Assembly (NCBI GenBank): GCA_002269645.1 | Contig: NIVC01000103.1 | Location: 62,001-126,000 of the forward strand | DNA: 64,000 nucleotides | Reading direction: 5' to 3' | Origin: Macrostomum lignano | Lineage: Eukaryota | Part shown: positions 1 through 50,488 of the stretch, piece by piece | Layout: the number at the start of each line of letters is the position of its first letter | Position numbering within the stretch: the stretch's first letter is position 1 | Made by a program: the position numbers and the translations under genes | The notes under the pieces: model-generated | Databases searched by the model: none | What the model was told of the DNA's origin: nothing | What the model saw: only the letters and a program-made list of their open reading frames with translations

Positions 1-574
1 GGTCATAATAGAAATGGCGGGTTGGCGAAGCAAAGGGTGAAATAGTCCCGGCGATTAGCCCTCCTGCCGCTTCAAAGATAAGAGACTGTCTGTTGGCAAG
101 AGTACCCGGGGTTTAGTTGGGGGGGAGGCTCCTTCGGGTTGCCACGGCCGTGGGGGCGGTCTTATGACCGGTGTTTTTGGCCTATCTAACCCAGGAGAAG
201 GCACGGGCTCCCCTGAATGGTTCACTCTTGTCCCTCTAGCCTCGGGGAGGTTTATGATTTGTACCCGGGGGTGGTGGGCGGTCGGCCCCAGCATGGTAGC
301 CACGGCTCTAGGCCTTCGGGCCATCCCTAATAGGCTTGGGTCCTATCTAACCTGGTTTTTGGGCACGGGCTTCCTGACTGGTATGTCGTTCCGCTGTCAC
401 TGTCCCCCGGGGAGGTTTGTTTTTTTTGATACAGCCCTGTACAGTCCTCTATAGTCTAACTTGGCTTTTAGTGTACATTAGTACACTCCCTAGTAGGAAA
501 CTCATTTATGTCTAGTGGCGTAAGAGCCTATTTCAATGGCTGAGGCGCCGGAGCACTTATTTTAGTTTAGTTAG

Positions 575-1525
575 TTAGAGCGCAAATTCGGCGAGCCATT
601 CGTCCATGTCAGGTAGTTGTGGCGAGTGCCAAACCATCGGAGCTTGAACGCGGCGGCGGTCACCGAGACTAGCCATGCCTGCCATGACCATATCGGCCGG
701 CGTGAACTCCGGGAAACAGGCGTTCGTGGTAACGACCTGCGTATCCGGGGTGGCGATGTCGCCTGCGTGATCGACTACTGTTAAGAGCCAGTAGGCAGTA
801 CCCTCCGGGATGTTGGTGAGGTAGCCCACGGCAATCCGTCCTGAGTGGACAGCGTCCTCGACAAACCTTGAGAAATGTGCGAGGGTGGGTTGCGGCAGAT
901 GGTGATCGTTGGCGTCCTGAGCGGCGGGTGGCTGCCAGGGAGCCGGAAAGAAACGCTCGGCACCACTACGCACTGTTCACTTGCCAATAGCGTTACAGAA
1001 ATCAGCAACGCATTTCGGCAAGATGGTGTCGGTTTGATGTGCGACTCTTCCATCTGTCCTGCGACCGGTAACCTTGGAATACACAGCGTGTATTCGGGCG
1101 CAGAGGTAGTAGCGGCAGGCACCAGCGAATTCGTCTTCGGTGCACGACGGGGCTACGTCCTCAGCCGGCCAGAGCTCAGTCACAATGGCTCTGTATAGTT
1201 TTCTCCAAATGTGGTCGAATGGAGCGTGATTCATCACGACCTCGATTCGGTCATTGGAGATGCGAAGGTCCAGCCTTCGGGCAAGCTGGTCGATCCGAGA
1301 TGGCGGCGGGTCACCGCAGTTGCGTCGCGGCGCCGTGCTTGGCGTCGGCTGATGCACTATAGCCGGTGGCCTCGGCGGTCCAGGTCGGCGAGTAGTCTGG
1401 TGGCCAATGGATTGGCTACCTCTGCCCATACTACGCTTTCCGGCGCCTGATTGCGACCGTCTATCGCGGTTCGGATCCTGCCTAGGTCGCGCGGACGACG
1501 GGCCGGCCGGCCTATTGGACGACAG
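575..1525 (-). pseudogene. Endogenous partiti-like (dsRNA) virus capsid protein gene with one in-frame TGA
   Basis: ORFs 977..1429 and 575..973 are in the same frame, separated only by TGA (977-979) and one codon. The frame stays open upstream to a CTG at 1523-1525 and encodes an Arg/Pro-rich arm. Motifs YYLCARIHAVYSKVTGRR, LPKCVADFCNAIG, EGTAYWLL and FPEFTPAD match my recollection of invertebrate partiti-like virus capsids. Confidence 0.72.
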
Positions 1526-1941
1526 TGTACAAAAACTTAATTCTTAGGCTAGACTGTATTAGTACTACAGGCTCCCCCGAACTTCAACTGCTAGATACTT
1601 GTATAGAACTCCCCAACTCCTCGATCTATTCCTGGCATAATTATTTCCCAAGCTAAAACTACTAATAGTAGCGCAAAAGCCTATGTGCCCTAGTACAATA
1701 AAATAGCAAAAAACGCTAATTTTGATACTGAAAAAGTGTAGAACCAGCCAATATTATCAATAGTTTCTCTGGCCGATACAGTCTCTTTTTAAATTAAACT
1801 TATTAATTTGCGGTGGTTTGCAAGTTTGAAATCTTCACCACTGTTTCTATGCTGTAACCTGGGGACTTAGTTACCTCATCGTCACTTTAACCTTACCTGT
1901 TTCATAGACACACATTCTCCCCTAAAAATGCCTTTTTTAAG

Positions 1942-2597
1942 TTCGGCTGGGCCGCGGTCCAAAATTCGCACCTGTCGCTGATACCTCAGCTAGCGGAGAC
2001 GGACACCGAACGGACTCGTTTAAATTCAATCCGATTCGCTTTCACCGTGGCCAGCAATATTGTTGTGTACCTGAGCGCATTTCTATTACTGAAATTCAAC
2101 GAAATTGAAACTGGCAAGCCGGACGACGACTCAGGCCAGCTGAGTCCGGCTGATGCCGAGAGTTTTCGCTACTTAGTATTCATAGTCTGCAGTCTTGGCA
2201 GCCTGTGCACCCTGCTGTTTCATCTCGTGCTAAAGGAGGTGCCAAATTCAACAGTCGAAGTCAACGACAATCGCGCCGGCATCAATGACGCAGAGGAAGT
2301 CGATGACGGCGTCGAGGATCGACCGCTAGCAGCAGCTACAAGCTCAGCGTCCACCGCTGTCTGTACCAAGATGCGCGCGTTGGACTGGCTGAAGGAGCCA
2401 CAGTTCTATGCCATCGGCACTCTGTACATGCTCACCCGGCTGATAATTAATGTTGCTCAAGTTTACCTGCCGCTTCTGGTTACAGAATCTTTCGGATTGC
2501 ACAAGGCTTGGATTGCTATTGTGCCGTTAGTTGTGTACTTTGTTAGCATGCTTACTAGCGTCTTGATTGAGACTTGCCACGCTCTAGGCAGGAACCG
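1942..2597 (+). CDS. MFSD12: MFS transporter MFSD12-like, internal exon (5' exons not in window)
   Basis: Acceptor ttttttaag| at 1941, then FGWAAVQNSHLSLIPQL...RFAFTVASNIVVY, matching the MFSD12 FGWAATQISHLSLIPEL motif. WLKEPQFY..LYMLTRLIINVAQVYLP follows. Donor CG|gtgagt at 2598. Confidence 0.88.
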
Positions 2598-3127
2598 GTG
2601 AGTCCGAGAGAATTTAATATCCTATGTTTTAAGTACATTGCAGCATTTAACAAGTCTGAGTTTCACGCTATACCACCATTCCCCGTGCGTGCGGTCACCG
2701 CAAGTTTTGTCGTGCCCAGCCGTGAGGGCCAACAGAGATTGTACATGACGATGCTGTGACAAAAATGGCTAAAATTCGTTTGAGTCGCTCTAGTGACTTT
2801 GAACGACTCAAACGCGTTTAATGCAACACTGTTGTTGCGTCACAAGCGCGTCACGCGAGTTGTAGAATCGCTCGCAAAAGAGTCTTCCAAGAATCGTTGT
2901 GTTGGTGCTTAACTTTTGCTTATTCTAGAGTTGCTAAAATGGTCACTGTTACTGTTACTGTCTCCGCTTGATTTAGTCCACAGACCTGCTTGCAATTATT
3001 GATATTATAGATTGTAGTTTTTCATTTCTGACAAAACAAGAATTGAGGTTTATTTGGCATTCATCCGTATCTGCACCGGTGCTTCGCTTAACTACTTGTT
3101 GGGTTATTAATTAATTTCAAACTGCAG

Positions 3128-3599: not shown

Positions 3600-3774
3600 T
3601 ATAGTGCTGCGGCTACTGGCTTTTTCATGTCTCTTGATGACCAATTCAGAAGAATGGCAGGTTTTTACTAATGAAAGGGTAATAAGTCAACTATAGCATA
3701 AATTTATAGTGTTGAAACTGGTAATGCTTGAGTTTTAAATTCAGTTGAAAGACTTCGGAAATCATTTTGAGTAG

Positions 3775-4192
3775 CCTCAAGTGAGTAGCCACAGGCAGGT
3801 AGCCTCAGGTAGGTAGCCACAGGCAGGTAGCCTCAGGTAGGTAGCCACAGGCAGGTAGCTTCAAGTACGTAGCCTCAAGTAGGTAGCCTCAGGTAGATAG
3901 CCTCAGGTAGGTAGCCTCAGGTAGGTAGCCACAGGCAGGTAGCTTCAAGTATGCAGCCTAAGGTAGGTGGCCTCAGGTAGTAGCCTCAGGTAGTAGCCTC
4001 AGGTAGTAGCCTTAAGTAGGTAGCCTCAGATAGTAGCCTCAGGTAGGTAGCTTCAGGTAGTAGCCTCAGGTAGGTAGCTTCAGGTAGTAGCCTCAGGTAG
4101 TAGCCTCAGGTAGTAGCCTCAGGTAGATAGCCTCGGGTAGTAGCCTCGAGTATGCAGCATCAAGTAGTAGCTTCAGGTAGGTAGCCTCAGGT
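3775..4192. repeat. Minisatellite, 13-14 bp unit (GTAGCCTCAGGTAG)
   Basis: Tandem array read directly from the sequence. Confidence 0.9.
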
Positions 4193-4804
4193 GATGCACG
4201 AAGTATATACACGAATTTTCAAAAAAGGTATCGTTGACATTAATTCCCTATTCTTTGGTTATGAATATAATTACCTACGGGTATTATTGACCGTAAGCCA
4301 CCAGTTATTATTTGTTGTTATCGAAATTTGCACACTTTATATCATGTTTATAGCAAATCTGTGTTTTAATGAAGCAACTAATTTGATTTTATTTGCTATA
4401 ATTTTTCTGTAAAATAGACTTGAATACAATATATTTGCAGCTGCACAATCTGAGTAAGGCGGTGCGCTTATCAGCTCTGCTTCTCCGTGTGCATGGTTGA
4501 GGCGTGCAACGAATTAAAGATGATGAACTCGTATTAGTTTGATGTTCCATTATACAATATTTCTGCTTGATTAGCCAAATCAATGCACCGAAAACCAGAT
4601 TGGTCCAAGTTTGTTTTATGTTTTCTCCACGTTAGCCTACTACTAATAGTAGGCCCATATCCAGATAGCTCGGATGTTCCAACACGCCTCTATATATATT
4701 CTATTTTTGCAATCCTTTATACCATAATCTGTGTTTGAAATATCTTATTTTCTACTAAATACATTATTTTCTATGTTCAATAAGTGATTACTGTGGCTAA
4801 GTAG

Positions 4805-7055
4805 TGCCTCAGTGACTGAGTTGTGTGTCTGTCTCCTGTGAACACTTCCTTAGTGAGTGGCTCAGTGACTGAGCTGTGTGTCTGTCTCCTGTGAACACTT
4901 CCTGAGTGAGTAGCCCAGTGACTGAGCTGTGTGTCTGTCTCCTGTGAACACTTCCTGAGTGAGTAGCCCAGTGACTGAGCTGTGTGTCTGTCTCCTGTGA
5001 ACACTTCCTTAGTGAGTGGCTCAGTGACTGAGCTGTGTGTCTGTCTCCTGTGAACACTTCCTTAGTGAGTGGCTCAGTGACTGAGCTGTGTTCCTGTCTC
5101 CTGTGAGCACTTCCTTAGTGAGTGGCTCAGTGACTGAGCTGTGTGCCTGTCTCCTGTGAACACTTCCTGAGTGAGTAGCCCAGTGACTGATCTGTGTGCC
5201 TGTCTCCTGTGAACACTTCCTGAGTGAGCGGCTCAGTGACTGAGCTGTGTGTCTGTCTCCTGTGAACACTTCCTTAGTGAGTGGCTCAGTGACTGAGCTG
5301 TGTGCCTGTCTCCTGTGAACACTTCCTGAGTGAGTAGCCCAGTGACTGATCTGTGTGCCTGTCTCCTGTGAACACTTCCTGAGTGAGCGGCTCAGTGACT
5401 GAGCTGTGTGTCTGTCTCCTGTGAACACTTCCTGAGTGAGCGGCTCAGTGACTGAGCTGTGTGTCTGTCTCCTGTGAACACTTCCTGAGTGAGTAGCCCA
5501 GTGACTGAGCTGTGTGTCTGTCTCCTGTGAACACTTCCTGAGTGAGTAGCCCAGTGACTGATCTGTGTTCCTGTCTCCTGTGAACACTTCCTGAGTGAGT
5601 AGCCCAGTGACTGATCTGTGTGCCTGTCTCCTGTGAACACTTCCTGAGTGAGTAGCCCAGTGACTGAGTTGTGTGCCTGTCTCCTGTGAACACTTCCTGA
5701 GTGAGTAGCCCAGTGACTGAGTTGTGTGTCTGTCTCCTGTGAACACGTGAGTGAGTAGCCCAGTGACTGAGCTGTGTTCCTGTCTCCTGTGAACACTTCC
5801 TGAGTGAGCGGCTCAGTGACTGATTTGTGTGTCTGTCTCCTGTGAACACTTCCTGAGTGAGTAGCCCAGTGACTGAGCTGTGTGTCTGTCTCCTGTGAAC
5901 ACTTCCTGAGTGAGTAGCCCAGTGACTGAGCTGTGTGTCTGTCTCCTGTGAACACTTCCTGAGTGAGTGGCTCAGTGACTGAGCTGTGTGCCTGTCTCCT
6001 GTGAACACTTCCTGAGTGAGTAGCTCAGTGACTGAGCTGTGTTCCTGTCTCCTGTGAACACTTCCTGAGTGAGCGGCTCAGTGACTGATTTGTGTGCCTG
6101 TCTCCTGTGAACACTTCCTGAGTGAGCGGCTCAGTGACTGAGTTGTGTGCCTGTCTCCTGTGAACACTTCCTGAGTGAGTAGCCCAGTGACTGAGCTGTG
6201 TGTCTGTCTCCTGTGAACACTTCCTGAGTGAGTAGCCCAGTGACTAAGCTGTGTTCCTGTCTCCTGTGAACACTTCCTGAGTGAGTAGCCCAGTGACTGA
6301 TCTGTGTGCCTGTCTCCTGTGAACACTTCCTGAGTGAGTAGCCCAGTGACTGAGCTGTGTGTCTGTCTCCTGTGAATACTTCCTGAGTGAGTGGCTCAGT
6401 GACTGAGTTGTGTCTGTCTCCTGTGAACACTTCCTGAGTGAGTAGCTCAGTGACTGAGTTGTGTCTGTCTCCTGTGAACACTTCCTGAGTGAGCGGCTCA
6501 GTGACTGAGCTGTGTGCCTGTCTCCTGTGAACACTTTCTGAGTGAGTAGCTCAGTGACTGAGTTGTGTCTGTCTCCTGTGAACACTTCCTGAGTGAGTAG
6601 CTCAGTGACTGAGTTGTGTGCCTGTCTCCTGTGAACACTTCCTGAGTGAGTAGCTCAGTGACTGAGTTGTGTGCCTGTCTCCTGTGAACACTTTCTGAGT
6701 GAGTAGCTCAGTGACTGAGTTGTGTCTGTCTCCTGTGAACACTTCCTGAGTGAGTAGCTCAGTGACTGAGTTGTGTGCCTGTCTCCTGTGAACACTTCCT
6801 GAGTGAGCGGCTCAGTGACTGAGTTGTGTGCCTGTCTCCTGTGAACACTTCCTGAGTGAGTAGCCCAGTGACTGAATTGTGTGCCTGTCTCCTGTGAACA
6901 CTTCCTGAGTGAGTAGCCCAGTGACTGAATTGTGTGCCTGTCTCCTGTGAACACTTCCTGAGTGAGCGGCTCAGTGACTGAGTTGTGTGCCTGTCTCCTG
7001 TGAACACTTCCTGAGTGAGCGGCTCAGTGACTGAGTTGTGTGCCTGTCTCCTGTA
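4805..7055. repeat. Tandem repeat, 53-bp unit (GAGTGAGTAGCCCAGTGACTGAGCTGTGTGTCTGTCTCCTGTGAACACTTCCT), about 42 copies
   Basis: Unit counted from the sequence. It explains the many repetitive ORFs in the track. Confidence 0.95.
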
Positions 7056-7639
7056 ATGTCTGCTTGTCTGGAGTATTCAATTTTACTGGAAATGTAAAAT
7101 CATGTTCTGTTCTTCCACGTGAATGGAATTCCTATTGCCTTTTTTGCCACTTGTGCCTGGAATTAAAAAATTTTCTAGATTTATAGATGCATGCGTTTTG
7201 GATAATGTTGTGATTCAATTATTTTTTATTACTATTACCATTTGTAATTGTTTAACTGTAATTGTTTTTTGCACCTATTCTGCGTCTTTCCTTAATTGTT
7301 CGTCTGGGGGAGGCATCACCTATCAGGTTTGTGTTGTTTTTATAATTTATCACTTTTTTAATTCCTCAAAAAGGGAATAAACTTTTCCAAAGTAGAGCAC
7401 GCGGTTCTGTGGCTTAAAAATTTGATTCCGATTTTGCCACAGAATTGGATGTAATCTACGAAATTATCTGTGTAGTGTCTTGTATTCATTTTATTGAAGA
7501 CAACGATTAATATTCTGTTAATGCCAGTGTAGGTGCCAGTAGGTCCGTTAAAAACCTCACTGCTGCGTGCGTGGCTGTTTGTCTGTATGTCTGTTTATGT
7601 CTTCCTGTCCGTCTGTTTGTTTGCTTGTGACTTGTGTCT

Positions 7640-8600
7640 GTTTTTGGCGGCCTGTCTGTCTGTCTGTTTTCGACTGCCTGCTGTCTGTTTTTGACAGTCT
7701 GCTGCCTGTTTTTGACTGCCTGCTGTCTGTTTTTGACAGTCTGCTGTCTGTTTTTGACTGTCTGCTGTCTGTTTTTGACTGTCTGCTGTCTGTCTGTTTT
7801 TGACTGCCTGCTGTCTGTCTGTTTTTGACTGTCTGCTGTCTGTCTGTTTTTGACTGTCTGCTGTCTGTCTGTTTTTGACTGTGCTGTCTGTCTGTCTTTG
7901 ACTGTCTGCTGTCTGTCTGTTTTTGACTGTCTGCTGTCTGTCTGTTTTTGACTGCCTGCTGTCTGTCTGTTTTTGACTGTCTGCTGTCTGTCTGTTTTTG
8001 ACTGTCTGCTGTCTGTTTTTGACTGTCTGCTGTCTGTTTTTGACTGTCTGCTGTCTGTTTTTGACTGCCTGCTGTCTGTTTTTGACAGTCTGCTGTCTGT
8101 TTTTGACTGCCTGCTGTCTGTTTTTGACAGTCTGCTGTCTGTTTTTGACTGTCTGCTGTCTGTTTTTGACTGTCTGCTGTCTGTCTGTTTTTGACTGCCT
8201 GCTGTCTGTCTGTTTTTGACTGTCTGCTGTCTGTCTGTTTTTGACTGTCTGCTGTCTGTCTGTTTTTGACTGTGCTGTCTGTCTGTCTTTGACTGTCTGC
8301 TGTCTGTCTGTTTTTGACTGCCTGCTGTCTGTCTGTTTTTGACTGTCTGCTGTCTGTCTGTTTTTGACTGTCTGCTGTCTGTTTTTGACTGTCTGCTGTC
8401 TGTTTTTGACTGTCTGCTGTCTGTTTTGACTGTCTGCTGTCTGTCTGTTTTTGACTGCCTGCTGTCTGTCTGTTTTTGACTGTCTGCTGTCTGTCTGTTT
8501 TTGACTGTCTGCTGTCTGTCTGTTTTTGACTGTGCTGTCTGTCTGTTTGTTTTTGACTGTGCTGTCTGTCTGTCTTTGACTGTCTGTCTGTCTGTTTTTT
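7640..8600. repeat. Minisatellite, 21/25-bp units (GACTGTCTGCTGTCTG(TCTG)TTTTT)
   Basis: Tandem array read directly from the sequence. Confidence 0.93.
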
Positions 8601-9300: not shown

Positions 9301-10560
9301 TCAGGTGCGATAAAAAATTCTAGTTTTCTTGGCCAAGCGTTCGCTTCGCCTGGGTGACGGCTTGGATTGAACTCCGGCCTCAGTCTGTTGCTGTTGTGCT
9401 CTCTCAGCTTGTTCTGTTCCCGGTAGTGTCTCAGTGTCTGTCGATGACGGACGCGTCTGTTGGCCGTCGTCACTTGGACTGCTGCCACCGGGCTTGGAAT
9501 CCCCCATTTCCGTAGTTCCGTGAGCCTCAGGTACCTCACCGATTCGTAGTTGATCGAGGTGGGTCTTTAGATTTCGTCCAGTCTCTGTGGTAACGACTGC
9601 TGTGTTGCTGCCAAGCATTTTGGCGAATCTCACAGTTCGTGGCTCATGAGAACTTGATGCACGGTAGATGAGTGATTCTCCTGGGATCCACTTGGACTGA
9701 GTGCTGCTCTCCGAGATGGGGAGTCTTATTTGTCTGCCGTTCAACAACTCGGACGGTGATGCTTGCTGCTTCCCTTTGGCAGCTCTGTAGAACAGTAGAA
9801 ATCTGTCAATACTTCTTTGGGATAAACCATTGGTCTTGATTGTCTCTTTGACGGTTCGCACCATTCGCTCTGCAATGCCGTTGCTCTGTGGATGGTAGGC
9901 GGGCGTTGTGATGTGCGAACAGCCAATCTGGGTGAGCCAGCCGGTCACCGCTTCGCTCACAAAACTAGGGCCGTTGTCTGACACGAGACACTTGGGCACC
10001 CCCTGTTGTGAGAACAATCTTCTAAGTCTGGAAATGACTGTGTCGGCCTTCATGTCGCTCGTGATGAAGACTTCCGGGTAGCTCGAGTGCGCATCCACAA
10101 TGATGAGTAGGTACTTGCCCTCTATCGGACCGGCAAAATCAATGTGCACTCGCTCCCAGGGGTTGTCTGGTTCTGGCCACGAGTGCCGAAAGTTCTTATT
10201 TCTGGACTTGTACGCGTTGGACACGTTGCATCGTCCAATGTAGTCAGCGATGTCACGGTCCATCTGTGGCCACCAGAACTGTTCCCTCAAAATTGACTTT
10301 GACTTTTCCACCCCAAGGTGCGTTGAGTGTACAGCTGCCAGGGGCAGTTTCTCTCAGGACACGAGGCAATACAATTCTGTTCATTCTGTAAATAATTCCA
10401 TCATTGACAGTTAGCTCATCTTGAACTTTCGAGTAGCTGAGTAGGTGTGGGTCGTCAAATAGATTATTGTTAATTATGGCTGCGCCCAGGCATCTGAACT
10501 CCGGGTCCTCTCTGGTTGCGTGTGCAATGCGATCCAGCTGAATTACTCCCGGGTTGTCAG
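9301..10560 (-). pseudogene. Gypsy integrase, out of frame with pol (two frameshifts near 10560 and 10343)
   Basis: HSTHLG..WWPQMDRDI..CNVS (last Cys changed to Ser), PWERVHIDFAGP, VSDNGPSF, HPQSNGIAERMV. Confidence 0.9.
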
Positions 10561-13247
10561 ATCGATGCTGTCTGTGCATTCGGCTTAGCGGGCACCAGTC
10601 GAGATAGCGCATCCGACAGCATTAGCTTTGATGGTCGATACTGTATGTCATAGTCATAAGCAGCTAGCATGATTGCCCATCGTTGTAGTCGAGCTGAAAC
10701 TCTGGTGGGCAGCTGTTTGTCTGGCGCGAATATGTATGTGAGGGGCCGGTGATCAGTTATCAGTGTGAACCTCCGGCCATACAAGAACCGATGGCATCTT
10801 TGAATGCACCAAACCAGTGCCAGGCCTTCACGCTCTATTTGCGAATATTTTGTTTCGGCGTCAGACAGAGTCTTGCTCATGTACAGCACGACTTGACCGC
10901 TTTGTGTCAACACTCCGCCCAGAGCTCGCTGAGAACTGTCGCATTCCAGTTCAATGGGCTTCTCCGGATCAAATATTTGAAGGCTCGATTGATCAGAGAG
11001 AGTGACCTTGATTTCGTCAAATGCTATTTGACACTCCTTTGTCCACACGAAGTCCTCATTTTTCTTTCTTAGTCGATTGAGAGGCTTGGTCAGTGCAGCT
11101 AGGTTTCTGATGAACTTGCCGCTAAAATTTACGAGACCCAGGAAAGATTCAAGCTCGCCAACGTTCTGCGGTGGTGTCATGTCCTGGATTGCCTTCACTT
11201 TGGCTGGGTCCAGCTTGAGCTGATCTCCTTCCAATAAGTAGCCTAGAAACTTGATCGAAGTCTTGCGGAATTCACTTTTCGCCGTGTTGATCTTCAATCC
11301 TTGCTGGTTTAGTCGATGCAATACTTCCGTCTCACGAACTGCCAATTGTTCTACGCCTTTGCCGCATATCAATATGTCGTCTACGTAGGCAATGACGCCA
11401 GGAATTCCTTGTAGGACTTGGCTAATGTACCGCTGGAAGATCGCAGGTGCTGTTTTCACTCCGAACGGAAGCTTGTTGAAAGCGAACATCCCAAATGGTG
11501 TTGACATTACTGTCAGCTCTTTGGAAGCTTCATCTAGTGGGATCTGGTGATAAGCTTTCTCTAGGTCCAGACGAGTGAATATCCGGCTGCCAGCAGCAGT
11601 TGCAATCACTTCGTCAGGTGCAGGCATCGGATATGAATCGTTGATAAGATGAGAATTGATTGTCACCTTGTAGTCGACGCAAAGTCTGAGCTTTCCAGAA
11701 GGTTTCTTGACCACGACAATTGGTGAGGCCCATTCACTGAACTTGACGGGCTTGATGGTGTCTTCTTCAAGCAACCGATCGATTTCATCCTTGACTCCCT
11801 GTCTGAGTGCGAAGGGTAGCGGCCTGGGTTTGCAATGAATTGGAGTGGTTCCTTCCTTGATCTTAAGAGTTACTGGTGGAAATTCGCATGACTGGGTTGC
11901 CGATGTGCAGCTGTTGTCTACAGCGTTTAGCGTGAAATTGAGCTTGTCTCGGCCAACCAGAACAAAGTTCCTCTGCGATTCCACAATGAAGAATGTGATT
12001 GGAATGAACTCGTCATTGTACTCCAACTCAGTGTCGTGTGTTTCAAAGACCTTCATCTGCGTATCAGCGTATGTTGTCAGAACAGTGTCTGTAGGTGTCA
12101 GCTTTGGACAACCCAATCGTTTCCAGATCGTTTTTGACATTACCGAAACTCCTGCCCCAGTATCGATTTGTGCGTTCACGCTAAGCATCGACCCGCTCGT
12201 GTGTCTGAGCCTAACAGGCACGGTGTAGCTATCAACGGGATGTCGAATGTGAAAACAATCCTCCTGTTCAGCTTCGCTTGCATCTACAAAGCTTGTGGTC
12301 CTTGGCCACACTGCAGCTCGCCTAAATTGACCAGATGCTGACGGGATTTTGAACGATTTTCGGCCTTTGCCAAAACCAGTTGATTTCGTTTTGCAAACTG
12401 TTGCGAAGTGGTTTTGCATGCCACATTTGTTGCACGTTTTTCCTTTCGCAGGACACCCTCCATTGGAGCCATGCATAGTGCCACATCTGCCACACTTGGA
12501 GCTTGTAGAGTGGGAGCCTCTGGCCACCGATGCTGAAATTTTCATTACTTCAGAAGACTGCGGCTGACTGGTGCAACCCTTTAGTATTTGCGTTTGTGAT
12601 AGGTTCTGGTGCGCCTCAGCGATGTTGATAGCTGTCTCAAACGTGAGAGTGCTGAAGTCCTGTTCCAATAACTTGCTGATGGCCACCTTGTCATTCAAAC
12701 CGAATACGAGCTGATCTCTCAGTCTCTCATCTCTGGATAGGCCAAACTGACACTTGTCTGCCTGCATGCAGAGTTGCTGTGCATACTCACGAATGCTCAT
12801 TGATGCCGTGCGAGTGATATGCTGGAAATTGAATCTCTCAGCCATGACGAACGTCTTTGGTTCCAGGATGCTGGCCAGTAGTTTGGTCAGTTCATCGAAG
12901 CTCTTTTCTCCCGGCTTCTTGGGAGCGGCTCGATCTGCCAATGCGTCGTACAGCTTGGTGCTGAGCTTCATCAGCAGCAGCTTGTTTTTCGTGTCGTCCT
13001 GCCAGCCGTTGAGTTCGCTGCACAGTGTGAATCGGTCCAACCACCTCTGGAAGTTCGAACTTTCATCGAGTTTTTCGATGTCAACTTGCTGTCCTCTCGA
13101 TACTTGTGCGCTTGGGTTCTGCGCTGTCGCTGTTGCCGACTTTGTCGCTTGGACTGATTTCGACGAGATCGCAAGCGGTGGTGCTTTGTCGCTCGAAACC
13201 GTTTTACCAACTCCTTTAGTTGGCGATGCTGGCGTACTTCCAGGCAT
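10557..13247 (-). CDS. Gag-Pol: Gag with two Zn-knuckle-like motifs, aspartic protease (DTGA), RT (YVDD), RNase H
   Basis: ORF track shows CGRC..H..C, CNKCGMQNHFATVC, DTGAGVS, LDLEKAYHQI, YVDD, CDSSQRALG and TDHRPL. Confidence 0.95.
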   Translation of the reverse strand: MPGSTPASPTKGVGKTVSSDKAPPLAISSKSVQATKSATATAQNPSAQVSRGQQVDIEKLDESSNFQRWLDRFTLCSELNGWQDDTKNKLLLMKLSTKLYDALADRAAPKKPGEKSFDELTKLLASILEPKTFVMAERFNFQHITRTASMSIREYAQQLCMQADKCQFGLSRDERLRDQLVFGLNDKVAISKLLEQDFSTLTFETAINIAEAHQNLSQTQILKGCTSQPQSSEVMKISASVARGSHSTSSKCGRCGTMHGSNGGCPAKGKTCNKCGMQNHFATVCKTKSTGFGKGRKSFKIPSASGQFRRAAVWPRTTSFVDASEAEQEDCFHIRHPVDSYTVPVRLRHTSGSMLSVNAQIDTGAGVSVMSKTIWKRLGCPKLTPTDTVLTTYADTQMKVFETHDTELEYNDEFIPITFFIVESQRNFVLVGRDKLNFTLNAVDNSCTSATQSCEFPPVTLKIKEGTTPIHCKPRPLPFALRQGVKDEIDRLLEEDTIKPVKFSEWASPIVVVKKPSGKLRLCVDYKVTINSHLINDSYPMPAPDEVIATAAGSRIFTRLDLEKAYHQIPLDEASKELTVMSTPFGMFAFNKLPFGVKTAPAIFQRYISQVLQGIPGVIAYVDDILICGKGVEQLAVRETEVLHRLNQQGLKINTAKSEFRKTSIKFLGYLLEGDQLKLDPAKVKAIQDMTPPQNVGELESFLGLVNFSGKFIRNLAALTKPLNRLRKKNEDFVWTKECQIAFDEIKVTLSDQSSLQIFDPEKPIELECDSSQRALGGVLTQSGQVVLYMSKTLSDAETKYSQIEREGLALVWCIQRCHRFLYGRRFTLITDHRPLTYIFAPDKQLPTRVSARLQRWAIMLAAYDYDIQYRPSKLMLSDALSRLVPAKPNAQTASI

Positions 13248-13504: not shown

Positions 13505-14240
13505 TAAAGCTACCACCCCTGAAGCTAAATCTGAAGCTACCCCTGAGGCTAAACCTGAAGCTAAACCTGAAGCTACCCCTGAAGCTAAACCTAAAGCTAA
13601 ACCTAAAGCTAAACTTAAAGCTAAACCTGAAGCTAAACCTGAAGCTACCTCTGAGGCTAAACCTGAAGCTAAACCTGGAGCTACCCCTGAAGCTAAACCT
13701 AGTTTTAGCTAAGCTAAAACTAAACTTGAAGCTAAACCTGAAACTAAACCTGAAGCTAAACCTGGAGCTAAACCTGAAGCTACCCCTGAGGCTAAACCTA
13801 AAGCTTAACCTGAAGCTACCCCTGAAGCTAAACCTAAAGCTAAACCTAAAGCTAAACCTGAAGCTAAATCTGAAGCTAAACCTAAAGCTAAATCTGAAGC
13901 TAAACCTAAAGCTAAATCTGAAGCTAAACCTAAAGCTAAATCTGAAGCTAAACCTAAAGCTAAATCTGAAGCTAAACCTAAAGCTAAATCTGAAGCTAAA
14001 CCTAAAGCTAAATCTGAAGCTAAACCTAAAGCTAAATCTGAAGCTAAACCTAAAGCTAACTCTGAAGCTAAACCTAAAGCTAAATCTGAAGCTAAACCTA
14101 AAGCTAAATCTGAAGCTAAACCTAAAGCTAAACCTAAAGCTAAATCTGAAGCTAAACCTAAAGCTAAACCTAAAGCTAAATCTGAAGCTAAACCTAAAGC
14201 TAAACCTAAAGCTAAATCTGAAGCTAAACCTAAAGCTAAC
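13505..14240. repeat. Minisatellite, 12-bp unit (GCTAAACCTGAA), in CORO7 intron 1
   Basis: Tandem array read directly from the sequence. Confidence 0.92.
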
Positions 14241-14373
14241 CCTTATAGTTAACGCTCGAACTTTTCTAGAGCACAGCTTAAAATTATGTACTACTCACCT
14301 GCTGTAAGTAGACTAAATCGAATTTGACAAGCGCAATCGTGAACATTTTGATTAATTATCGTCTTTTTAAAAG

Positions 14374-18664: not shown

Positions 18665-18679
18665 GTGAGGCTTTCAGGT

Positions 18680-19150
18680 CGTGACCTTTAACTTCTTTGT
18701 TCGTCACCTTATCTTTTCAGGTCGTGACCTTAGCTTTTCGGGTCGTGACCTTAGATTTTCGGGTCGTGACCTTAGCTTTTCGGGTCGTGACCTTAGCTTT
18801 TCGGGTCGTGTCCTTAGCTTTTCGAGTCGTGACCTTAGCTTTTCGGGTCGGGACCTTAGCTTTTCGGGTCGTGACCTTAGCTTTTCGGGTCGTGACCTTA
18901 GCTTTTCGGGTCGTGACCTTAGATTTTCGTGTCGTGACCTTAACTTTTCGAGTCGTGACCTTAGCTTTTCGGGTCGTGACCTTAGCTTTTCGGGTCGTGA
19001 TCTTAGATTTTCGTGTCGTGACCTTAACTTTTCGAGTCGTGACCTTAGCTTTTCGGGTCGTGACCTTAGCTTTTCGGGTCGTGATCTTAGATTTTCGTGT
19101 CGTGACCTTAACTTTTCGAGTCGTGACCTTAGCCTCTTTGGATCGTGACC
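18680..19150. repeat. Minisatellite, 21-bp unit (CGGGTCGTGACCTTAGCTTTT), in CORO7 intron 7
   Basis: Tandem array read directly from the sequence. Confidence 0.92.
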
Positions 19151-22801: not shown

Positions 22802-23683
22802 GTGCGCAAGATGGGCTTCTGCGACACCAAAGTGCTGCTTTGCGTTGTGCTGCGAAGCTACACCCTAACAATGTCGGCCAATATTTCGCCCGACGAAGCA
22901 AACGCGGAACTGCACCGAGCGCTGGACTTTGTCTCAAAAACATTGAGCAGCCGGCTGTCGCCTCTGACTGGCCAATGGCTCGGCTTTGATTCCAACTGGG
23001 AGGCTCTGACGGCGGCCGTCTACCTCGCCTCCAGCGCTGCCAGCCCCGCCTTCGTCAGTCGGGAGGCTCGCCGTCGGTCCTTCGAGCGGGACGACGTCTG
23101 GAGACGCCGAGGCGGCCGACAGTCGCCGGAGGACATGGTCGAGAGCGGCTTCTTCTACCTTGGAGAGGCCGACCACGTCAAGTGCTTCTTCTGCGACCTC
23201 GACCTCAGAGACTGGGACTCTGGAGACGTGCCGGAGGCGGAGCACGCCAAGTTCAGCCCGCTGTGCTTCTTCTTGAAGAGCTCGCGCGGTCTCGACTGGC
23301 TGCGGAGATCGAGTCCGCGACCTCCGAACTATCCGACATCGTGCAGCCGGCAGGACCACAACCGGCTGCTGCGGATTCTGGCAGACGAGCTGCAAAGCGA
23401 GGCCGCGGACATTGTGCGCAGGGTCGGCTTCAGCGACACCAAAGTGCTGCTTTGCGTGGCCAGGAAGTTCATCCAGTTCAGGCAGAAGTTCAGCAGGCAG
23501 GAGCTGCTGCTGGAGAAGCAGAAGGAGTGGGACAGGGAGATGTCAGGCGAGCCTGAGCACTTCGTTGGCCGATTTAATCTGGCCGGGGTGCTGCGCTCGC
23601 ATCTCAGCGCTCCGGAGTGCAACGCAGCAGCGAGTTTGCCGATGCCGCAGCTCTTCATCAGTGAGCAGCTGCAGCCTCTGTGA
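22802..23683 (+). CDS. IAP-like protein copy 1: single BIR plus UBA-like segment, no intact RING (start uncertain: ATG 22811 or 22871, or spliced)
   Basis: BIR signature CFFC-X16-H-X6-C, with RRRSF..W and ESGFFYLG..DHVKC. Confidence 0.85.
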   Translation: MRKMGFCDTKVLLCVVLRSYTLTMSANISPDEANAELHRALDFVSKTLSSRLSPLTGQWLGFDSNWEALTAAVYLASSAASPAFVSREARRRSFERDDVWRRRGGRQSPEDMVESGFFYLGEADHVKCFFCDLDLRDWDSGDVPEAEHAKFSPLCFFLKSSRGLDWLRRSSPRPPNYPTSCSRQDHNRLLRILADELQSEAADIVRRVGFSDTKVLLCVARKFIQFRQKFSRQELLLEKQKEWDREMSGEPEHFVGRFNLAGVLRSHLSAPECNAAASLPMPQLFISEQLQPL

Positions 23684-23959: not shown

Positions 23960-25654
23960 ACAACAACAACAACAAAGTACGCAGCCCGGCAAGCAAGGTC
24001 ACAGTTGGAGCAGGGTGCGTCAGATGGCGCGTCGCAGGGCCGTTGGCAGTGTCGAGCGCCCCGGCGTCGCGTAGGAGGCTCGGGCCTGACCCGGCCTGAA
24101 CGGGCCCTGCAAGGTGAGCAGCAGGACGTCCTGAACAGGTTGGGGGCAGTAGCCCTCGGCCCGGATCACGTGGCCCACCAGTTGAAGTCGCCGCCGGCGC
24201 CAGATGGTGGACGGGCGCTGCAGCTTGGTCCGATCGTACAGGGCCTCGGTCCCGACGCTCTCGTCAACTCGAAAGGCCGCACGGAGCAGCCCTGTGTGCG
24301 CCGAGTCCAGCTGCCGCTCTAGGGTAGCCGTCAGCGTCCAACGTCTCGGCGTTGTACAGCAGGACGGTTTCGACCACCGCCTGCCACAGTCAGTACCTCG
24401 GTCTTCAGCGTGTTGACAACCAGATCGACTCTTGATGCCACCTCGACCAGCCTGTCGATCTGGCGCTGGGCGCCTTCAAACGACGAGGACAGGAGGGCGA
24501 AGTCGTCGGAGTAGCTTTTCGCAGTGGTGGTGACCGATGCGTCTGCGCAGCAGGAAGCCGTCATCAGCCGAGGGGAGTGCAGTCCGAAGCACCCAGTCCA
24601 GCAGCAGCACGAAGAGGAACGGCGCCAGCGTGTCGCCCTGCAGAACTCCTGACGAAGTGTCGAACAGGTCAGACAGCCGCCGTCACCACAGCAGCTCGAG
24701 TGTCGCAATACAGCGCCATGACAGCGTCGATTAGCTGCTGTGGTACCCGGTAGGCTCGAAGGACAAAGGGAAGCGCGGCTCTCAACACCGAGTCAAACGC
24801 CTTCCGAAAGTCAACGAAGACAATGATCAGCGTAGACTGGCGGATGCGCGCCTCCTCGATGACACGGCGGAGTACGAGGCTCTGGGTCACTGTACCGCGT
24901 TGCGGCCGGAATCCGTTCTGCTCGTACCGCAGGTCCAGCACCGACTGCAGACGGTTGAGCAGCAGCCGGTAAAAGAGCTTCGCGGCGCAGGACATCAGCG
25001 TGGTCTTCTTTCCGCTTCGTCCCTGCCTTCTTCGGGATCGGCACGATGTGCACGACGGTCCACTCGGTGGGCGCGGGGGCGCTGGCGAGCACGCGGTTTA
25101 TGACGCCTGTGACCTGGGAGGCCACACAGCGGAGCCGAAGCGCTTCGACCGGGACTTCGTCGGGGCCGAGCGCCTTGCCGCCTGATGTTTTCCGAGCGAA
25201 CAGCACATCGTCCTCCGTGATGACTGGTCTGGTGCAGAAGTCCTCCTCAGCTGGGAGCGGCGTGTCCAGTGGGAGCGCAAAGCGGCGACGCGGGCGCGTT
25301 CACGATGCCGGCGAAGAAGTCGCGCAATTCATTCCTGCGCTCCTCCAGGGTGTCGCCGGCCAGGTTCAGCGCCACGCACTTTTTGCGCCCCGTCAGAGTC
25401 CGGACGGCCGTCCACACTGCGCGGCTCTTCACGTCGGGGCCGGCTGCAGTGATGGACCGGACGGCGTCGTCAACAGCCGCCTGCTGCCGCTCATCTGGAA
25501 CGCGTCTTCAGCGTCGCCCGTGGGCCGCCGGTTTCTGCGGAGTCGCTCGATGTTGAGCAGCGCCTGTCTGATGGTCGGGTCGCTCTGCCAGACAGTCAGA
25601 GATTTCTGCGCTAGCCGCATCAGCGGGACCGTCTGCTCCGCAGCGGCTCTAACC
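23960..25654 (-). mobile_element. 5'-truncated, degenerate non-LTR retrotransposon (RTE-like LINE)
   Basis: RT motifs KALGPDEVP, HIVPIPKK, QNGFRPQRGT, FVDFRKAFDSV, QGDTLAP, YSDDFAL across broken frames. (TTG)n 3' tail. Candidate TSD TTATTAACA at 23951-23959 and 25655-25663. Confidence 0.9.
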
Positions 25655-26784: not shown

Positions 26785-27345
26785 TAGGCACTCATTTTGG
26801 CACCGCAGGCACTCATTTTGGCACCGCAGGCACTCATTCTGGCACCGCAGGCACTCATTTTGGCACCGCAGGCACTCATTTTGGCACCGCAGGCACTCAT
26901 TTTGGCACCGCAGGCACTCATTTTGGCACCGCAGGCACTCATTTTGGCGCCGCAGGCACTCATTTTGGCGCCGCAGGCACTCATTTTGGCGCCGCAGGCA
27001 CTCATTATAGCACCGCAGGCAATTATTTTGGCGCCGCAGGCACTCATTTTGGCGCCGCAGGCACTCATTATAGCACCGCAGGCACTCATTTTGGCGCCGC
27101 AGGCACTCATTTTAGCACCGCAGGCACTCATTTTGGCGCCGCAGGCACTCATTATAGCACCGCAGGCACTCATTTTGGCGCCACAGGCACTCATTTTAGC
27201 ACCGCAGGCACTCATTTTAGCGCCGCAGGCACTCATTTTAGCACCGCAGGCACTCGTTTTAGCGCCGCAGGCACTCATTTTGGCGCCGCAGGCACTCATG
27301 TTGGCGCCGCAGGCACTCATTTTAGCGCCGCAGGCACTCATTTTG
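26785..27345. repeat. Minisatellite, 21-bp unit (GGCACTCATTTTGGCACCGCA)
   Basis: Tandem array read directly from the sequence. Confidence 0.93.
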
Positions 27346-28159
27346 GTACAGAAGGCGCTACATTTTGGCACCATGAAGCAAAATTATTGATTACCATAAC
27401 GAGCCACAATTGGTGCGACTGGGGGACAAAGCTTTGGCATTTCTCCCCATGGCATTTATTGAGGGGGGCATGCCCCCCCTGCCACACTGATCTGAACTTA
27501 AACTTTATGTACACAGTTGTGGCCCTGCCAGTTTCACGAGAAGACCGTTTCCGAAATTGCAGGTTTTCTATGGAATACAATTTCAAGGATTTCCTATCAG
27601 TTAAAGGTGAATAATTGATCGAATGGCAGATTGATTTATAGCTAAACTGTAGTGACTAATCAAAGCACGCAAATGAACTTTGTGTTAGATGGTAGATGCA
27701 TGTATTTTTGCTTCAAATTAAAGTTAAACCACTGATTCTTTAAAATCCTTTTGTGCTTAATGCAATCTAGCTCACAATAAATTGATTCATCAATAAGAAA
27801 TTTTATGATAAAAACTGTCAGTTAGCAGGCAGTATGGATTATCGTAATTTTATAAATATCAAAAATCTGATTCCTAGTATCGATTTTCCTTTAGATTGTA
27901 CTTTTTGTAAAAAAAATGCTACGGAAAATAGCAGAGCAACAAAGAGAACAACATGTAATAATATTGTTGAAAATTTAGTTACATATCGCTGCAATAACAA
28001 TACTAGCAAAGATTTTTATATATCAAGCTGTTAAAAATAGCTTCACGGGGTTTGCGAACAGGGACGAGAGTGCACAACATTCTGTCAGAGAGAGAGAGAG
28101 AGACAGATACGAGTACAAGCTGTACATACAAAAAAGGGAACTTCAGTCCCTTTACATCA

Positions 28160-29113
28160 CTAACAAATATAAGCTCTCAGTTTGTCGGTAATTCTCAACT
28201 GACAGCGGTTCCTTGGGCAGTGTTGAAGCAGCTCAGCGCACTGCCGGCAGGAGTAGAAGTGCCGGCATGGCTGGAAGACAATCTCCAGCGGTCGGCTCCG
28301 GCAAAGTCGGCAAAGTGCGCTGCTCAGGTCCTGCTGATCTGCATTGTCAGGAGTGCTGGCTTGGCTGCAGACAGAGTTCAATGCGGTGTCGAGATCGAAT
28401 TCTGAGCTGAAAATTGGCCGCTCTCTGTTCTGATCGCAGTACAGCTCGTGGATCAGATCCTCTGGTTCAAGCAACCTTCTTTGACGGATAAACTTCCTGG
28501 CCACGCACAGCAGCACTTTGGTGGGACAGTAGCCCAGCTTCCTGAAGTCCGAGAATCTTCTTGTCTGTACAGCCAATCTCTGCAGCAGCTGGTTGTGGTC
28601 CTGCCGGCTGTACGATGTCGGATAGTTCGGAGGTCGCGGACTCGATCTCCGCAGCCAGTCGAGACCGCGCGAGCTCTTCAAGAAGAAGCACAACGGGCTG
28701 AACTTGGCGTGCTCCGCCTCCGGCACGTCTCCAGCGTCCCAGTCTCTGAGGCCGAGGTCGCAGAAGAAGCACTTGACGTGGTCGGCCTCTCCAAGGTAGA
28801 AGAAGCCGCTCTCGACCATGTCCTCCGGCGACTGTCGGCCGCCTCGGCGTCTCCAGACGTCGTCCAGCTCGAAGGACCGACGGCGAGCCTCCCGACTGAC
28901 GAAGGCGGGGCTGGCAGCGCTGGAGGCGAGGTAGACAACCGCCGTCAGAGCCTCGCATTGGTCCAGGATCGACCGAGACCGAGCCAGGGGGGACAGGCGG
29001 TCTCCCAGAGTTCTCGACACGTGGTACAGCGCCTGACTCGTTTGGTTTTCAGATCGAGTCTCCTGCGTGTTGATCTCGCTTCCCTGTTCAGTGGGCAGCT
29101 TTTCAGGAATCAT
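28160..29113 (-). CDS. IAP-like protein copy 2: BIR, UBA-like segment, C-terminal RING (317 aa, no intron in CDS)
   Basis: BIR CFFC-X16-H-X6-C. IAP-type RING at the extreme C-terminus: CRLC...VFQPCRHFYSCRQC..LQHCPRNRC. Confidence 0.9.
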   Translation of the reverse strand: MIPEKLPTEQGSEINTQETRSENQTSQALYHVSRTLGDRLSPLARSRSILDQCEALTAVVYLASSAASPAFVSREARRRSFELDDVWRRRGGRQSPEDMVESGFFYLGEADHVKCFFCDLGLRDWDAGDVPEAEHAKFSPLCFFLKSSRGLDWLRRSSPRPPNYPTSYSRQDHNQLLQRLAVQTRRFSDFRKLGYCPTKVLLCVARKFIRQRRLLEPEDLIHELYCDQNRERPIFSSEFDLDTALNSVCSQASTPDNADQQDLSSALCRLCRSRPLEIVFQPCRHFYSCRQCAELLQHCPRNRCQLRITDKLRAYIC

Positions 29114-29699
29114 TTTGCCACTTCTGGGTTGCTTTGTGTTCTCAAATTACTCGTACAGATTGCTTTTACAACTTATTGCGGCCTTACCAAAGTGTTTCAC
29201 CGGCTAGACCTCAGCCTTACCGCGGCAATCCCGTAGGTTTCCCTTTTGACCTTATCAGGAACTTCCCTTAGTTTATAACACGTATGTTCGCATTTCTACT
29301 AACAGTAGCTGAACGGGACATAACTCACTATCCGGCTAGAAAAATAAACTTCACTACTGAAACAAGTGTGTACTAAACTAGATGTACTTTGAAACGGAAT
29401 TCCTGACAGGCCGTACAATAATGTACATTGAAAAGTAGTGTCTGTTGGATGACACTGTAAATCTTTCTTATAGAGTTTTGTTTATTTTTACTTATGTACA
29501 TTTATTTTATCACACGAAATTACCATAACATTTTCTGTAGGCAAAAAAAGTATCCAATACATGTAAATAAAAAAGGGTCACCTGAGTAAGTCATTTTGTT
29601 CATTTATTACTTTTTAATTCTTGTATGTAGGGTATACTTGTTAGTAAAAATGACTTCTGACTTCTGTGCTGGAGTTTTCACTTAACTCTTCTCTTCCAA

Positions 29700-44090: not shown

Positions 44091-44339
44091 AAAAATCCTA
44101 TTTTTAGTAATACCAGTAATATCACGCAAACAGCGAGTGACTATGCTATTGTCCGAAAAACCGGTTCTCGACATCTATTTTTAGAACTTCCAAATTATGG
44201 TACATGTTAACCTGAATGTGACCAAAGTCTCACCCTTTTCTATTCAAAAACCCCACCTGTCAAGTTTGTCGCAAAATCCCGGGACTGAAATCCCGGCTTT
44301 AGAGGCCAAATCCCGGGATCCCGGGATTGGAATCCCTAC

Positions 44340-50450: not shown

Positions 50451-50488
<38 letters not shown>

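What the first reader, a model, noticed from the sequence alone, without database searches (positions are those of the whole stretch)
575..1525. Near full-length partiti-like dsRNA virus capsid gene integrated in an animal genome
Seen: a continuous 316-codon minus-strand frame with one TGA, a basic N-terminal arm, and the motifs ARIHAVYSKVTGRR, LPKCVADFCNAIG, VRSG, EGTAYWLL and FPEFTPAD. Knowledge: I recall this motif order from capsids of invertebrate-associated partiti-like viruses. Partitiviruses have no DNA stage, so a chromosomal copy must have been reverse transcribed by host retroelements. Inference: this is an EVE recording infection of this lineage by an undescribed partiti-like virus, and it could act as an antiviral small-RNA source or a co-opted protein.
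Basis: partly seen in the sequence, partly recalled or inferred. Interest (0 to 1): 0.85.

Follow-up and report, generated by a model that had tools for sequence, protein, structure and literature searches.

The report
Partiti-like virus capsid fossil in flatworm
A nearly full-length copy of the coat-protein gene of a small double-stranded-RNA (partiti-like) virus sits, with one premature stop, inside what is probably an intron of a transporter gene of the flatworm Macrostomum lignano (or a very close relative). It is an ordinary viral fossil of a known kind, though I found none reported for flatworms.

Summary
The minus strand of 575-1540 carries one frame of 322 codons with a single internal stop, against 9.8 +/- 3.0 in shuffles, and all the quoted motifs are present. 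A full HMMER scan of 1.84 billion proteins found 102 relatives (best E 4.8e-27, 36% identity). Nearly all are about 300 aa and sit alone on contigs of about 1.2 kb. One is the second-segment protein of Xinzhou partiti-like virus 1. An AlphaFold model (pLDDT 87.5) matches the solved capsid of Pepper cryptic virus 1 best (E 7e-5, TM 0.51), and predicted partitivirus capsids dominate the viral fold library hits. The host is Macrostomum lignano or a very close relative: a TIP41 exon in the window is 99.8% identical in DNA to that species. The copy has 1 stop and 0 frameshifts. It lies antisense about 400 bp upstream of an internal exon of an MFS transporter gene, so it is probably intronic. No significant target-site duplication or poly(A) tail was found, so the route of integration is inferred. 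Fragments of the same capsid family also lie in chromosomes of a whitefly and several nematodes, and partitivirus-derived genes in animal genomes have been surveyed. This is a new member of a known kind. Any role in small-RNA defence or as a protein is untested.

The parts
575..1429 (-). Capsid-like gene of a partiti-like virus, from the first ATG to the natural stop. It is broken: 1 in-frame stop, 0 frameshifts.
   Evidence: Translation. 102 relatives by phmmer, best E 4.8e-27. All 96 tblastn matches of family proteins fall in one frame, one match each, spanning 581-1375. AlphaFold model pLDDT 87.5. Best solved-structure match is the Pepper cryptic virus 1 capsid.
1430..1540 (-). Upstream extension of the same open frame: 37 codons, no ATG, G+C-rich and basic like the N-terminal arm. 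It may be the original start of the coding region or 5' leader. The G+C-rich block ends near 1520-1540.
   Evidence: G+C 0.60 here against 0.38 in 1541-1950; 8 K+R against 2 D+E.
429..574 (-). A+T-richer tract downstream of the stop, ending in a run of eight A. It may be the viral 3' untranslated region, with length and composition like those of exogenous relatives. Membership is uncertain.
   Evidence: G+C 0.42; relatives have 3' UTRs of 67-181 nt with G+C 0.23-0.44. The A run also aligns with the start of the next 165-nt unit, so it need not be a poly(A) tail.
1942..2601 (+). Neighbour: an internal exon of a host MFS-type transporter gene, preceded by a pyrimidine tract and AG. The viral copy lies antisense about 400 bp upstream of it.
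   Evidence: Pfam MFS_2 E 2.3e-10, starting at profile position 114 of 427. Translation. Sequence read directly.

Best explanation
This is an endogenous viral element: a DNA copy of the capsid segment (about 1.2 kb, one gene) of a small-capsid partiti-like dsRNA virus, fixed in the germ line of Macrostomum lignano or a very close relative. The source virus belongs to the family that includes Xinzhou partiti-like virus 1 but is not close to any sequenced member (36% identity or less). The plus-strand RNA of the segment was most likely reverse transcribed by a host retroelement enzyme and inserted, antisense, into what is probably an intron of an MFS transporter gene. Today it is most likely a non-functional pseudogene with one premature stop. 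The absence of frameshifts, the retention of most family-conserved residues and the sharp G+C boundary suggest it is either fairly young or was constrained for some time.

Shown: viral origin, capsid fold, chromosomal context at assembly level, and the count of breaks.
Inferred: the reverse-transcription route, the intronic position, the age, and the lack of function.
For: - **Family.** There are 102 relatives, 58 of them at E<=1e-10, and matches run through the position of the stop.
- **Named relative.** P0023 is the hypothetical protein YP_009329868.1 of Xinzhou partiti-like virus 1, on the 1222-nt record KX884239.1. The virus's RdRp, YP_009329867.1, is placed in the Partiti-Picobirna clade (PMC7150801).
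- **Genome form of relatives.** They sit alone on contigs of 1.15-1.6 kb with A+T-rich UTRs.
- **Fold.** The model has pLDDT 87.5 and pTM 0.78. The top PDB match is 7ncr_A, the Pepper cryptic virus 1 capsid, at E 7.3e-5 and TM 0.51, followed more weakly by the Atkinsonella hypoxylon virus and PsV-F capsids. The named BFVD matches down to about E 0.1 are nearly all capsids or coat proteins of partitiviruses and partiti-like viruses.
- **Host.** The TIP41 exon is 100% identical in protein and 99.8% in DNA to M. lignano. The window also holds MFS, BIR and coronin-like genes and transposons.
- **Breaks.** 1 stop and 0 frameshifts.
- **Conservation.** The copy keeps 13 of 15 columns that are >=90% conserved and 32 of 46 that are >=70% conserved. 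This is within, though low in, the range of the exogenous relatives.
- **Composition.** G+C is 0.59 against 0.38 and 0.42 in the flanks.
- **Reverse transcriptase source.** A Ty3/gypsy-type element with RT, RNase H and integrase domains lies 8-12 kb away.
Against: - No significant target-site duplication, poly(A) tail or retroelement fusion marks the ends. The best flank repeat is 19 nt at 84% identity with E about 5. The route and the exact limits are therefore unproven.
- Continuity with host DNA is known only from the assembly; no reads were available.
- The named relative is annotated only as 'hypothetical protein'. No Pfam family or PDB sequence matches, so 'capsid' rests on the fold match (TM about 0.5) and the segment architecture.
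- A single stop in an otherwise clean frame could also be an assembly error or one allele.
Confidence: 0.85

Rival explanations
1. It is a co-opted, still functional host gene or regulatory RNA derived from the capsid. Either the protein is made and the single stop is an assembly error, an allele or read through, or transcription of the host MFS gene through the intron yields RNA antisense to the viral capsid message that feeds small-RNA defence.
For: There are no frameshifts over about 285 codons, and the natural stop is kept. Most family-conserved residues are retained. G+C and third-position G+C (0.63) resemble host exons (0.59-0.79) more than exogenous relatives (0.40-0.55). The element is antisense to a host gene.
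Against: The frame as it stands is interrupted. No ATG precedes the G+C-rich upstream extension. No gene with the exact product of the first open stretch is on record in the public assemblies searched. The conservation score lies in the lowest tenth of the family. No expression or small-RNA data could be examined.
Confidence: 0.08
2. It is an assembly artefact or contamination. On this reading, viral cDNA or a read from an infecting virus was joined to host sequence, so nothing is integrated.
For: The element lies near the left end of the window, with only 574 bases of flank visible on that side. No retroposition hallmark was found. The window is not identical to the deposited contig NIVC01001340.1, with about 95.7% identity in non-coding DNA, so its assembly history is unknown to me.
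Against: A dsRNA virus has no DNA form that could enter a DNA library. A replicating virus would not be expected to carry a premature stop in its capsid gene. The right flank runs without a break into a host exon 400 bp away and then 62 kb of host sequence. No exogenous relative closer than 36% identity exists in about 15 billion public proteins.
Confidence: 0.04
3. It is virus-derived, but not from the shell protein. It could come from a capsid-like paralogue on an accessory segment of a partiti-like virus (I recall 'chaq'-type extra segments of insect partiti-like viruses), or from an unrelated small segmented RNA virus.
For: The only named relative is a 'hypothetical protein'. There is no sequence-level match to any recognised capsid family. 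The fold match is moderate (TM 0.51, rmsd 6.1 A).
Against: The best PDB match and nearly all the named BFVD matches are partitivirus capsids, with probability 1.00 for the top 20. Xinzhou partiti-like virus 1 has consecutive RefSeq protein accessions for its RdRp (YP_009329867.1) and this protein (YP_009329868.1). A disordered basic N-terminal arm followed by a helical shell domain is the usual capsid layout.
Confidence: 0.05

Closest known systems
[quoted passage not shown]
   Same: Same protein family: phmmer E 6.1e-20 with 34% identity; tblastn E 3.3e-26 over residues 30-283 of 316. Similar size, a variable N-terminal arm and the same conserved blocks.
   Different: The window copy is DNA in an animal chromosome and is interrupted by one stop. 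It is no closer to this virus than to any other family member (distance 0.82 against a family median of 0.80). Its coding G+C is higher (0.59 against 0.51).
Capsid protein of Pepper cryptic virus 1 (Deltapartitivirus), PDB 7NCR
   Same: Best solved-structure match of the model: Foldseek E 7.3e-5, probability 1.00, TM 0.51/0.44 over 243 columns. Both have a largely helical shell domain.
   Different: Only 14% identity, with no detectable sequence similarity. The rmsd of 6.1 A shows considerable divergence.
Partitivirus capsid- and polymerase-like genes already reported in cellular genomes (plants, insects, nematodes, protozoa, fungi: PMC12027680; partiti-like RdRp elements in Toxocara canis: PMC11445058)
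   Same: The same phenomenon: a gene of a dsRNA virus with no DNA stage found in a eukaryotic chromosome.
   Different: The word searches of PMC12027680 found no flatworm, and no paper found links Macrostomum to such elements. Per that survey, most capsid transfers are alpha- and deltapartitivirus genes in plants. This one is from the small-capsid animal-associated clade.
Chromosomal fragments of the same capsid family in Bemisia tabaci (CAH0392746.1/CAH0392747.1, chromosome OU963868.1), Caenorhabditis auriculariae (CAD6186033.1), Heligmosomoides polygyrus (VDP17960.1) and Panagrolaimus sp. ES5
   Same: They are members of the same family by phmmer and lie in large host contigs beside host genes.
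   Different: Those examined are partial: one 618-nt piece in B. tabaci and two pieces of 549 and 618 nt in C. auriculariae, swallowed into host gene models. The window copy spans nearly the whole gene.

Membership tests
Capsid protein of partiti-like viruses (Xinzhou partiti-like virus 1 type, ~300 aa) | Significant sequence similarity to the second-segment protein of a named partiti-like virus | tested here: met
   P0023 = YP_009329868.1. E 6.1e-20, name, tblastn E 3.3e-26.
Capsid protein of partiti-like viruses (Xinzhou partiti-like virus 1 type, ~300 aa) | Relatives encoded alone on a short RNA segment (about 1.2-1.6 kb, one gene, UTRs at both ends) | tested here: met
   Of the 20 best relatives looked up, all sit on contigs of 1148-1579 nt. 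Single-gene loci L001-L007 have 5' UTRs of 150-218 nt and 3' UTRs of 67-181 nt.
Capsid protein of partiti-like viruses (Xinzhou partiti-like virus 1 type, ~300 aa) | Partitivirus capsid fold | tested here: met
   Model pLDDT 87.5. Top PDB match 7ncr_A at E 7.3e-5 and TM 0.51. Fourteen BFVD matches at E<=1e-3; all of those that carry a name are partitivirus or partiti-like capsids. TM is only about 0.5, so this shows the same fold class, not a close match.
Partitiviridae (recognised genera) capsid families | Sequence-level match to a curated capsid family or to a solved partitivirus capsid | tested here: not met
   No Pfam family for the window protein or for any of 44 relatives. No PDB sequence match for the protein or the profile.
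Partitiviridae (recognised genera) capsid families | Partner segment with a partitivirus-type RdRp; T=1 particle of 120 subunits | not testable with these tools
   [quoted passage not shown] No particle data exist for this clade as far as I could find.
Endogenous viral element of a non-retroviral RNA virus | Sequence derived from a virus that has no DNA stage | tested here: met
   That partitiviruses are dsRNA viruses without a DNA stage is established knowledge.
Endogenous viral element of a non-retroviral RNA virus | Physically continuous with host chromosomal DNA | tested here: met
   At assembly level only. A host MFS exon starts at 1942, 400 bp from the element. The remaining 62 kb holds host genes, and TIP41 is 99.8% identical to M. 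lignano.
Endogenous viral element of a non-retroviral RNA virus | Junctions confirmed by independent DNA reads or PCR | not testable with these tools
   No read data were available.
Endogenous viral element of a non-retroviral RNA virus | Marks of retroposition (target-site duplication, poly(A) tail, fusion to retroelement sequence) | tested here: inconclusive
   The best direct repeat across the element is 19 nt at 84% identity, E about 5. An A8 run lies 146 nt after the stop but is also part of a neighbouring repeat unit. The flanks do not match any other part of the window.
Co-opted (domesticated) virus-derived gene | Uninterrupted reading frame with a start codon | tested here: not met
   One in-frame stop. 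No ATG in the upstream open extension.
Co-opted (domesticated) virus-derived gene | Expression, and purifying selection across orthologues | not testable with these tools
   There is only one weak negative: the exact product of the first open stretch is not on record in public assemblies.

The most novel reading that the evidence does not exclude
The copy is young and records a partiti-like virus lineage that still circulates in Macrostomum. Because it lies antisense in an intron of an expressed transporter gene, host transcription makes RNA complementary to the viral capsid message, which is processed into small RNAs that restrain that virus. This would be an EVE-based immunity of the kind described in mosquitoes, here in a flatworm.
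Probability: 0.08. Interest if true: 0.6.

Novelty: new member of a known kind. Interest (0 to 1): 0.3.

Why it matters
The element shows that small-capsid partiti-like viruses, so far tied mainly to nematodes and arthropods, also infected the germ line of a free-living flatworm. It comes from a lineage with no close sequenced relative. It also helps to name a family of about 100 unannotated ~300-aa proteins in public metatranscriptomes as partitivirus-type capsids. Macrostomum lignano is a laboratory model with transgenesis and RNA-seq resources, so expression and small-RNA production from the element can be checked directly. Beyond that it is an ordinary viral fossil.

Tried and rejected
- **Word-indexed protein searches.** The single-protein search found nothing. 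The family-profile search returned only one member, because the candidate list saturated.
- **IMG/VR.** A scan with the C-terminal half found no relative. The family alignment was too variable for pattern scanning.
- **Sequence libraries.** Pfam and PDB sequence searches gave only chance hits (CYLD and histone H2B against the low-complexity arm).
- **A second copy or a polymerase partner in the window.** Family proteins match only 581-1375. I did not screen the window with an RdRp profile.
- **Ends of the insertion.** Self-comparison of 1-2000 gave no significant repeat. Short shared words in both flanks are not above chance.
- **The two diverged 165-nt units at 96-420, tested as a possible structured viral 3' element.**
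  - The fold is not better than shuffles, z -1.5.
  - There is no Rfam family and no tRNA.
  - A 20-base pattern from them hit nothing in viral contigs and only two chance sites in metagenomes.
- **Identity of the relatives' samples.** No paper mentions the run accessions.
- **Position of the window in contig NIVC01001340.1.** The window turned out to be a diverged copy, not that contig. I therefore could not reach the matching site there to see whether it is empty.
- **Housekeeping.** Please redact it.

Full report
**1. Observation**

The minus strand of window 575-1540 translates as one frame of 322 codons with a single internal stop before the terminal stop. The first ATG is at 1429. The frame stays open for 37 more codons upstream without an ATG.

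The other five frames of the stretch carry 7-15 stops. Shuffles of the frame carry 9.8 +/- 3.0, and only 1 of 5000 had as few as one. The first 58 residues are basic and proline-rich (10 K+R, 3 D+E, 11 P) and are predicted disordered.

**2. What the protein is**

Curated libraries give nothing. Pfam has no match and PDB sequences give only chance hits. The word-indexed search of 5.8 billion clusters also found nothing.

The exhaustive HMMER scan of 1.84 billion cluster representatives found 102 proteins at E<=1e-3 and 58 at E<=1e-10. The best was 4.8e-27 at 36% identity. Most are 300-340 aa, and the matches run through the position of the stop.

An alignment of 44 relatives with the window protein shows several well-conserved blocks after a variable N-terminal arm. 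Of the 20 best relatives looked up, all lie on contigs of 1148-1579 nt. The loci fetched each carry one gene between A+T-rich UTRs of 150-218 nt and 67-181 nt. This is the layout of a monocistronic segment of a segmented RNA virus.

One relative carries a name. P0023 is the 316-aa hypothetical protein YP_009329868.1 / APG78354.1 of Xinzhou partiti-like virus 1, on record KX884239.1 of 1222 nt. [quoted passage not shown]

**3. Fold**

An AlphaFold2 model of the window protein was built with the family alignment, with an X marking the stop. It has mean pLDDT 87.5 and pTM 0.78.

Against the PDB, the only match at E<=1e-3 is the capsid of Pepper cryptic virus 1, a deltapartitivirus. That match is 7ncr_A, with E 7.3e-5, probability 1.00 and TM 0.51. 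The next matches, much weaker, are the capsids of Atkinsonella hypoxylon virus and Penicillium stoloniferum virus F.

Against predicted viral structures, the named matches down to about E 0.1 are nearly all capsids or coat proteins of partitiviruses and partiti-like viruses: Lysoka partitivirus, Verdadero virus, Camellia cryptic virus 2, Galbut virus ORF1 and Netjeret virus.

The profile of the family still finds no Pfam or PDB sequence match. 'Capsid' therefore rests on fold, segment layout and the named relative, not on sequence similarity to a recognised capsid family.

**4. Host and context**

A TIP41 exon at 58293-58769 is 100% identical in protein to BOX15_Mlig001131g2 of Macrostomum lignano. 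It is 99.8% identical in DNA to the deposited contig NIVC01001340.1, while adjacent non-coding DNA is about 95.7% identical. The window is therefore a paralogous, homeologous or allelic copy of that region, in M. lignano or a very close relative.

The window also holds the following:
- MFS, coronin-like and three BIR genes;
- a Ty3/gypsy-type element with protease, RT, RNase H and integrase domains;
- P-element-like and piggyBac-like remnants;
- many minisatellites.

On the plus strand, an exon that starts at about 1942 after a pyrimidine tract and AG matches Pfam MFS_2 from profile position 114 of 427. Earlier exons must therefore lie to the left. None is visible in 1-1941, so the viral copy most likely sits antisense in an intron of that gene. 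This is an inference.

**5. State of the copy**

All 96 tblastn matches of family proteins to the window fall in one frame, one match per protein. They lie between 581 and 1375 and reach the relatives' C-termini. The count of breaks is therefore one in-frame stop and no frameshift. There is no second copy in the window.

The copy keeps 13 of 15 alignment columns that are >=90% conserved and 32 of 46 that are >=70% conserved. Only 4-7 of the 44 relatives score as low or lower.

Its G+C is 0.59, with sharp drops to 0.38 and 0.42 in the flanks. Its third-position G+C (0.63) resembles host exons more than the exogenous relatives do.

In a neighbour-joining tree it is a long branch inside the family. 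Its distances to other members equal the family median, so no sequenced virus is close to the source.

Together these features fit a fairly recent insertion of a virus from an unsampled lineage, now decaying. A period of constraint cannot be excluded.

**6. How it got there**

Partitiviruses are dsRNA viruses without a DNA stage, which is established knowledge. A chromosomal copy therefore implies reverse transcription, usually ascribed to host retroelements, and an RT-bearing element lies 8-12 kb away.

I found no significant target-site duplication, poly(A) tail or fused retroelement sequence. The A8 run 146 nt after the stop also aligns with the start of a neighbouring repeat unit. The route and the outer limits of the insertion remain inferred. 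The limits lie somewhere within 429-1941.

One paper proposes reverse-transcriptase activity of a partitivirus RdRp itself (PMC12027680). I could not test that.

**7. Comparison with what is known**

Partitivirus capsid- and polymerase-like genes in plants, insects, nematodes, protozoa and fungi have been surveyed (PMC12027680). Partiti-like RdRp elements are reported in Toxocara canis (PMC11445058).

The same small-capsid family also has chromosomal fragments in Bemisia tabaci, Caenorhabditis auriculariae, Heligmosomoides polygyrus and Panagrolaimus sp. ES5. The two I examined are partial pieces of 549-618 nt inside host gene models.

I found no report for flatworms. A survey of flatworm viruses states that its sequences were absent from flatworm genomes (PMC9241645), and no paper found links Macrostomum to such elements.

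The finding is thus a new member of a known kind. It is notable for being nearly full length and for the host phylum.

**8. Rivals**

- Co-opted gene or small-RNA source: possible but untested, and the frame is interrupted. Confidence 0.08.
- Assembly artefact: unlikely, given the stop, the absence of any DNA form of the virus and the uninterrupted host flank. Confidence 0.04.
- Derivation from a capsid-like accessory segment or another virus group: not excluded, because the sequence link to recognised capsids is missing. Confidence 0.05.

**9. Verdict**

Function is probably none. Interest is modest (0.3).

Housekeeping: notebook entry 1 holds ORF-tool bounds that reveal the place of the break and should be redacted.

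Noticed in passing
window 96-420 (read on the minus strand): There are two tandem, diverged units of about 165 nt, with 73% mean column identity and several exactly conserved blocks. They are G+C-rich (0.61) like the viral gene and begin right after the A8 run downstream of it. The units are found nowhere else in the window. They are not significantly structured, and no Rfam family, tRNA or relatives were found. It is unclear whether they are host repeat, part of the inserted RNA, or another element.
   Followed up: partly
window 48000-64000 versus L012 (NIVC01001340.1): The window is not the deposited M. lignano contig but a diverged copy of the same region: 99.8% identical in the TIP41 exon, about 95.7% in adjacent non-coding DNA, and 76-93% elsewhere. 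This fits the duplicated genome of this species or a second haplotype. The other copy could serve as a presence/absence test for the viral insertion.
   Followed up: partly
window 9301-13247, minus strand: A Ty3/gypsy-type retroelement with long open frames: 896 aa with gag-like, aspartyl protease, RT and RNase H domains, and 336 aa with integrase. It shows that this genome region has a potential source of reverse transcriptase.
   Followed up: partly
window 22802-23683 (+), 28160-29113 (-), 33037-33720 (+): Three closely similar BIR (inhibitor-of-apoptosis) domain genes lie within 11 kb, in mixed orientation. Only the first was scanned against Pfam. This is a local gene-family expansion.
   Followed up: no
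window 35610-40397, minus strand: A single open frame of 1595 aa with a long internal run of a five-residue acidic repeat (from a 15-nt minisatellite at 37710-38522). It has no informative Pfam match, and its exact product is not on record in public assemblies.
   Followed up: partly
window 3770-8599 and many other places (e.g. 13518-14243, 18672-19150, 26786-27372, 29692-30680, 59867-60875, 61563-62719): The density of minisatellite arrays is unusually high, with periods of 14-53 nt and 20-60 copies each, for example a 53-nt unit repeated 42.6 times at 4808-7054. Several of them create long spurious open frames.
   Followed up: no
window 41474-42151 (-), 52359-53060 (-), 24811-25206 (-), 43635-44174 (-): Transposon remnants. 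These are a P-element/THAP9-like transposase fragment (TNP-like GTP-binding domain, E 1.6e-34), a weak piggyBac-like fragment, and two similar open frames that look like the N-terminal part of non-LTR reverse transcriptases but have no Pfam match.
   Followed up: partly
L008 12489-13106 (Bemisia tabaci OU963868.1) and L009 8609-9157, 10732-11349 (Caenorhabditis auriculariae CAJGYM010000003.1): Partial copies of the same capsid family are embedded in annotated host gene models. One of them is fused to a PITH-domain gene model. These gene models probably include viral fossils by mistake.
   Followed up: partly
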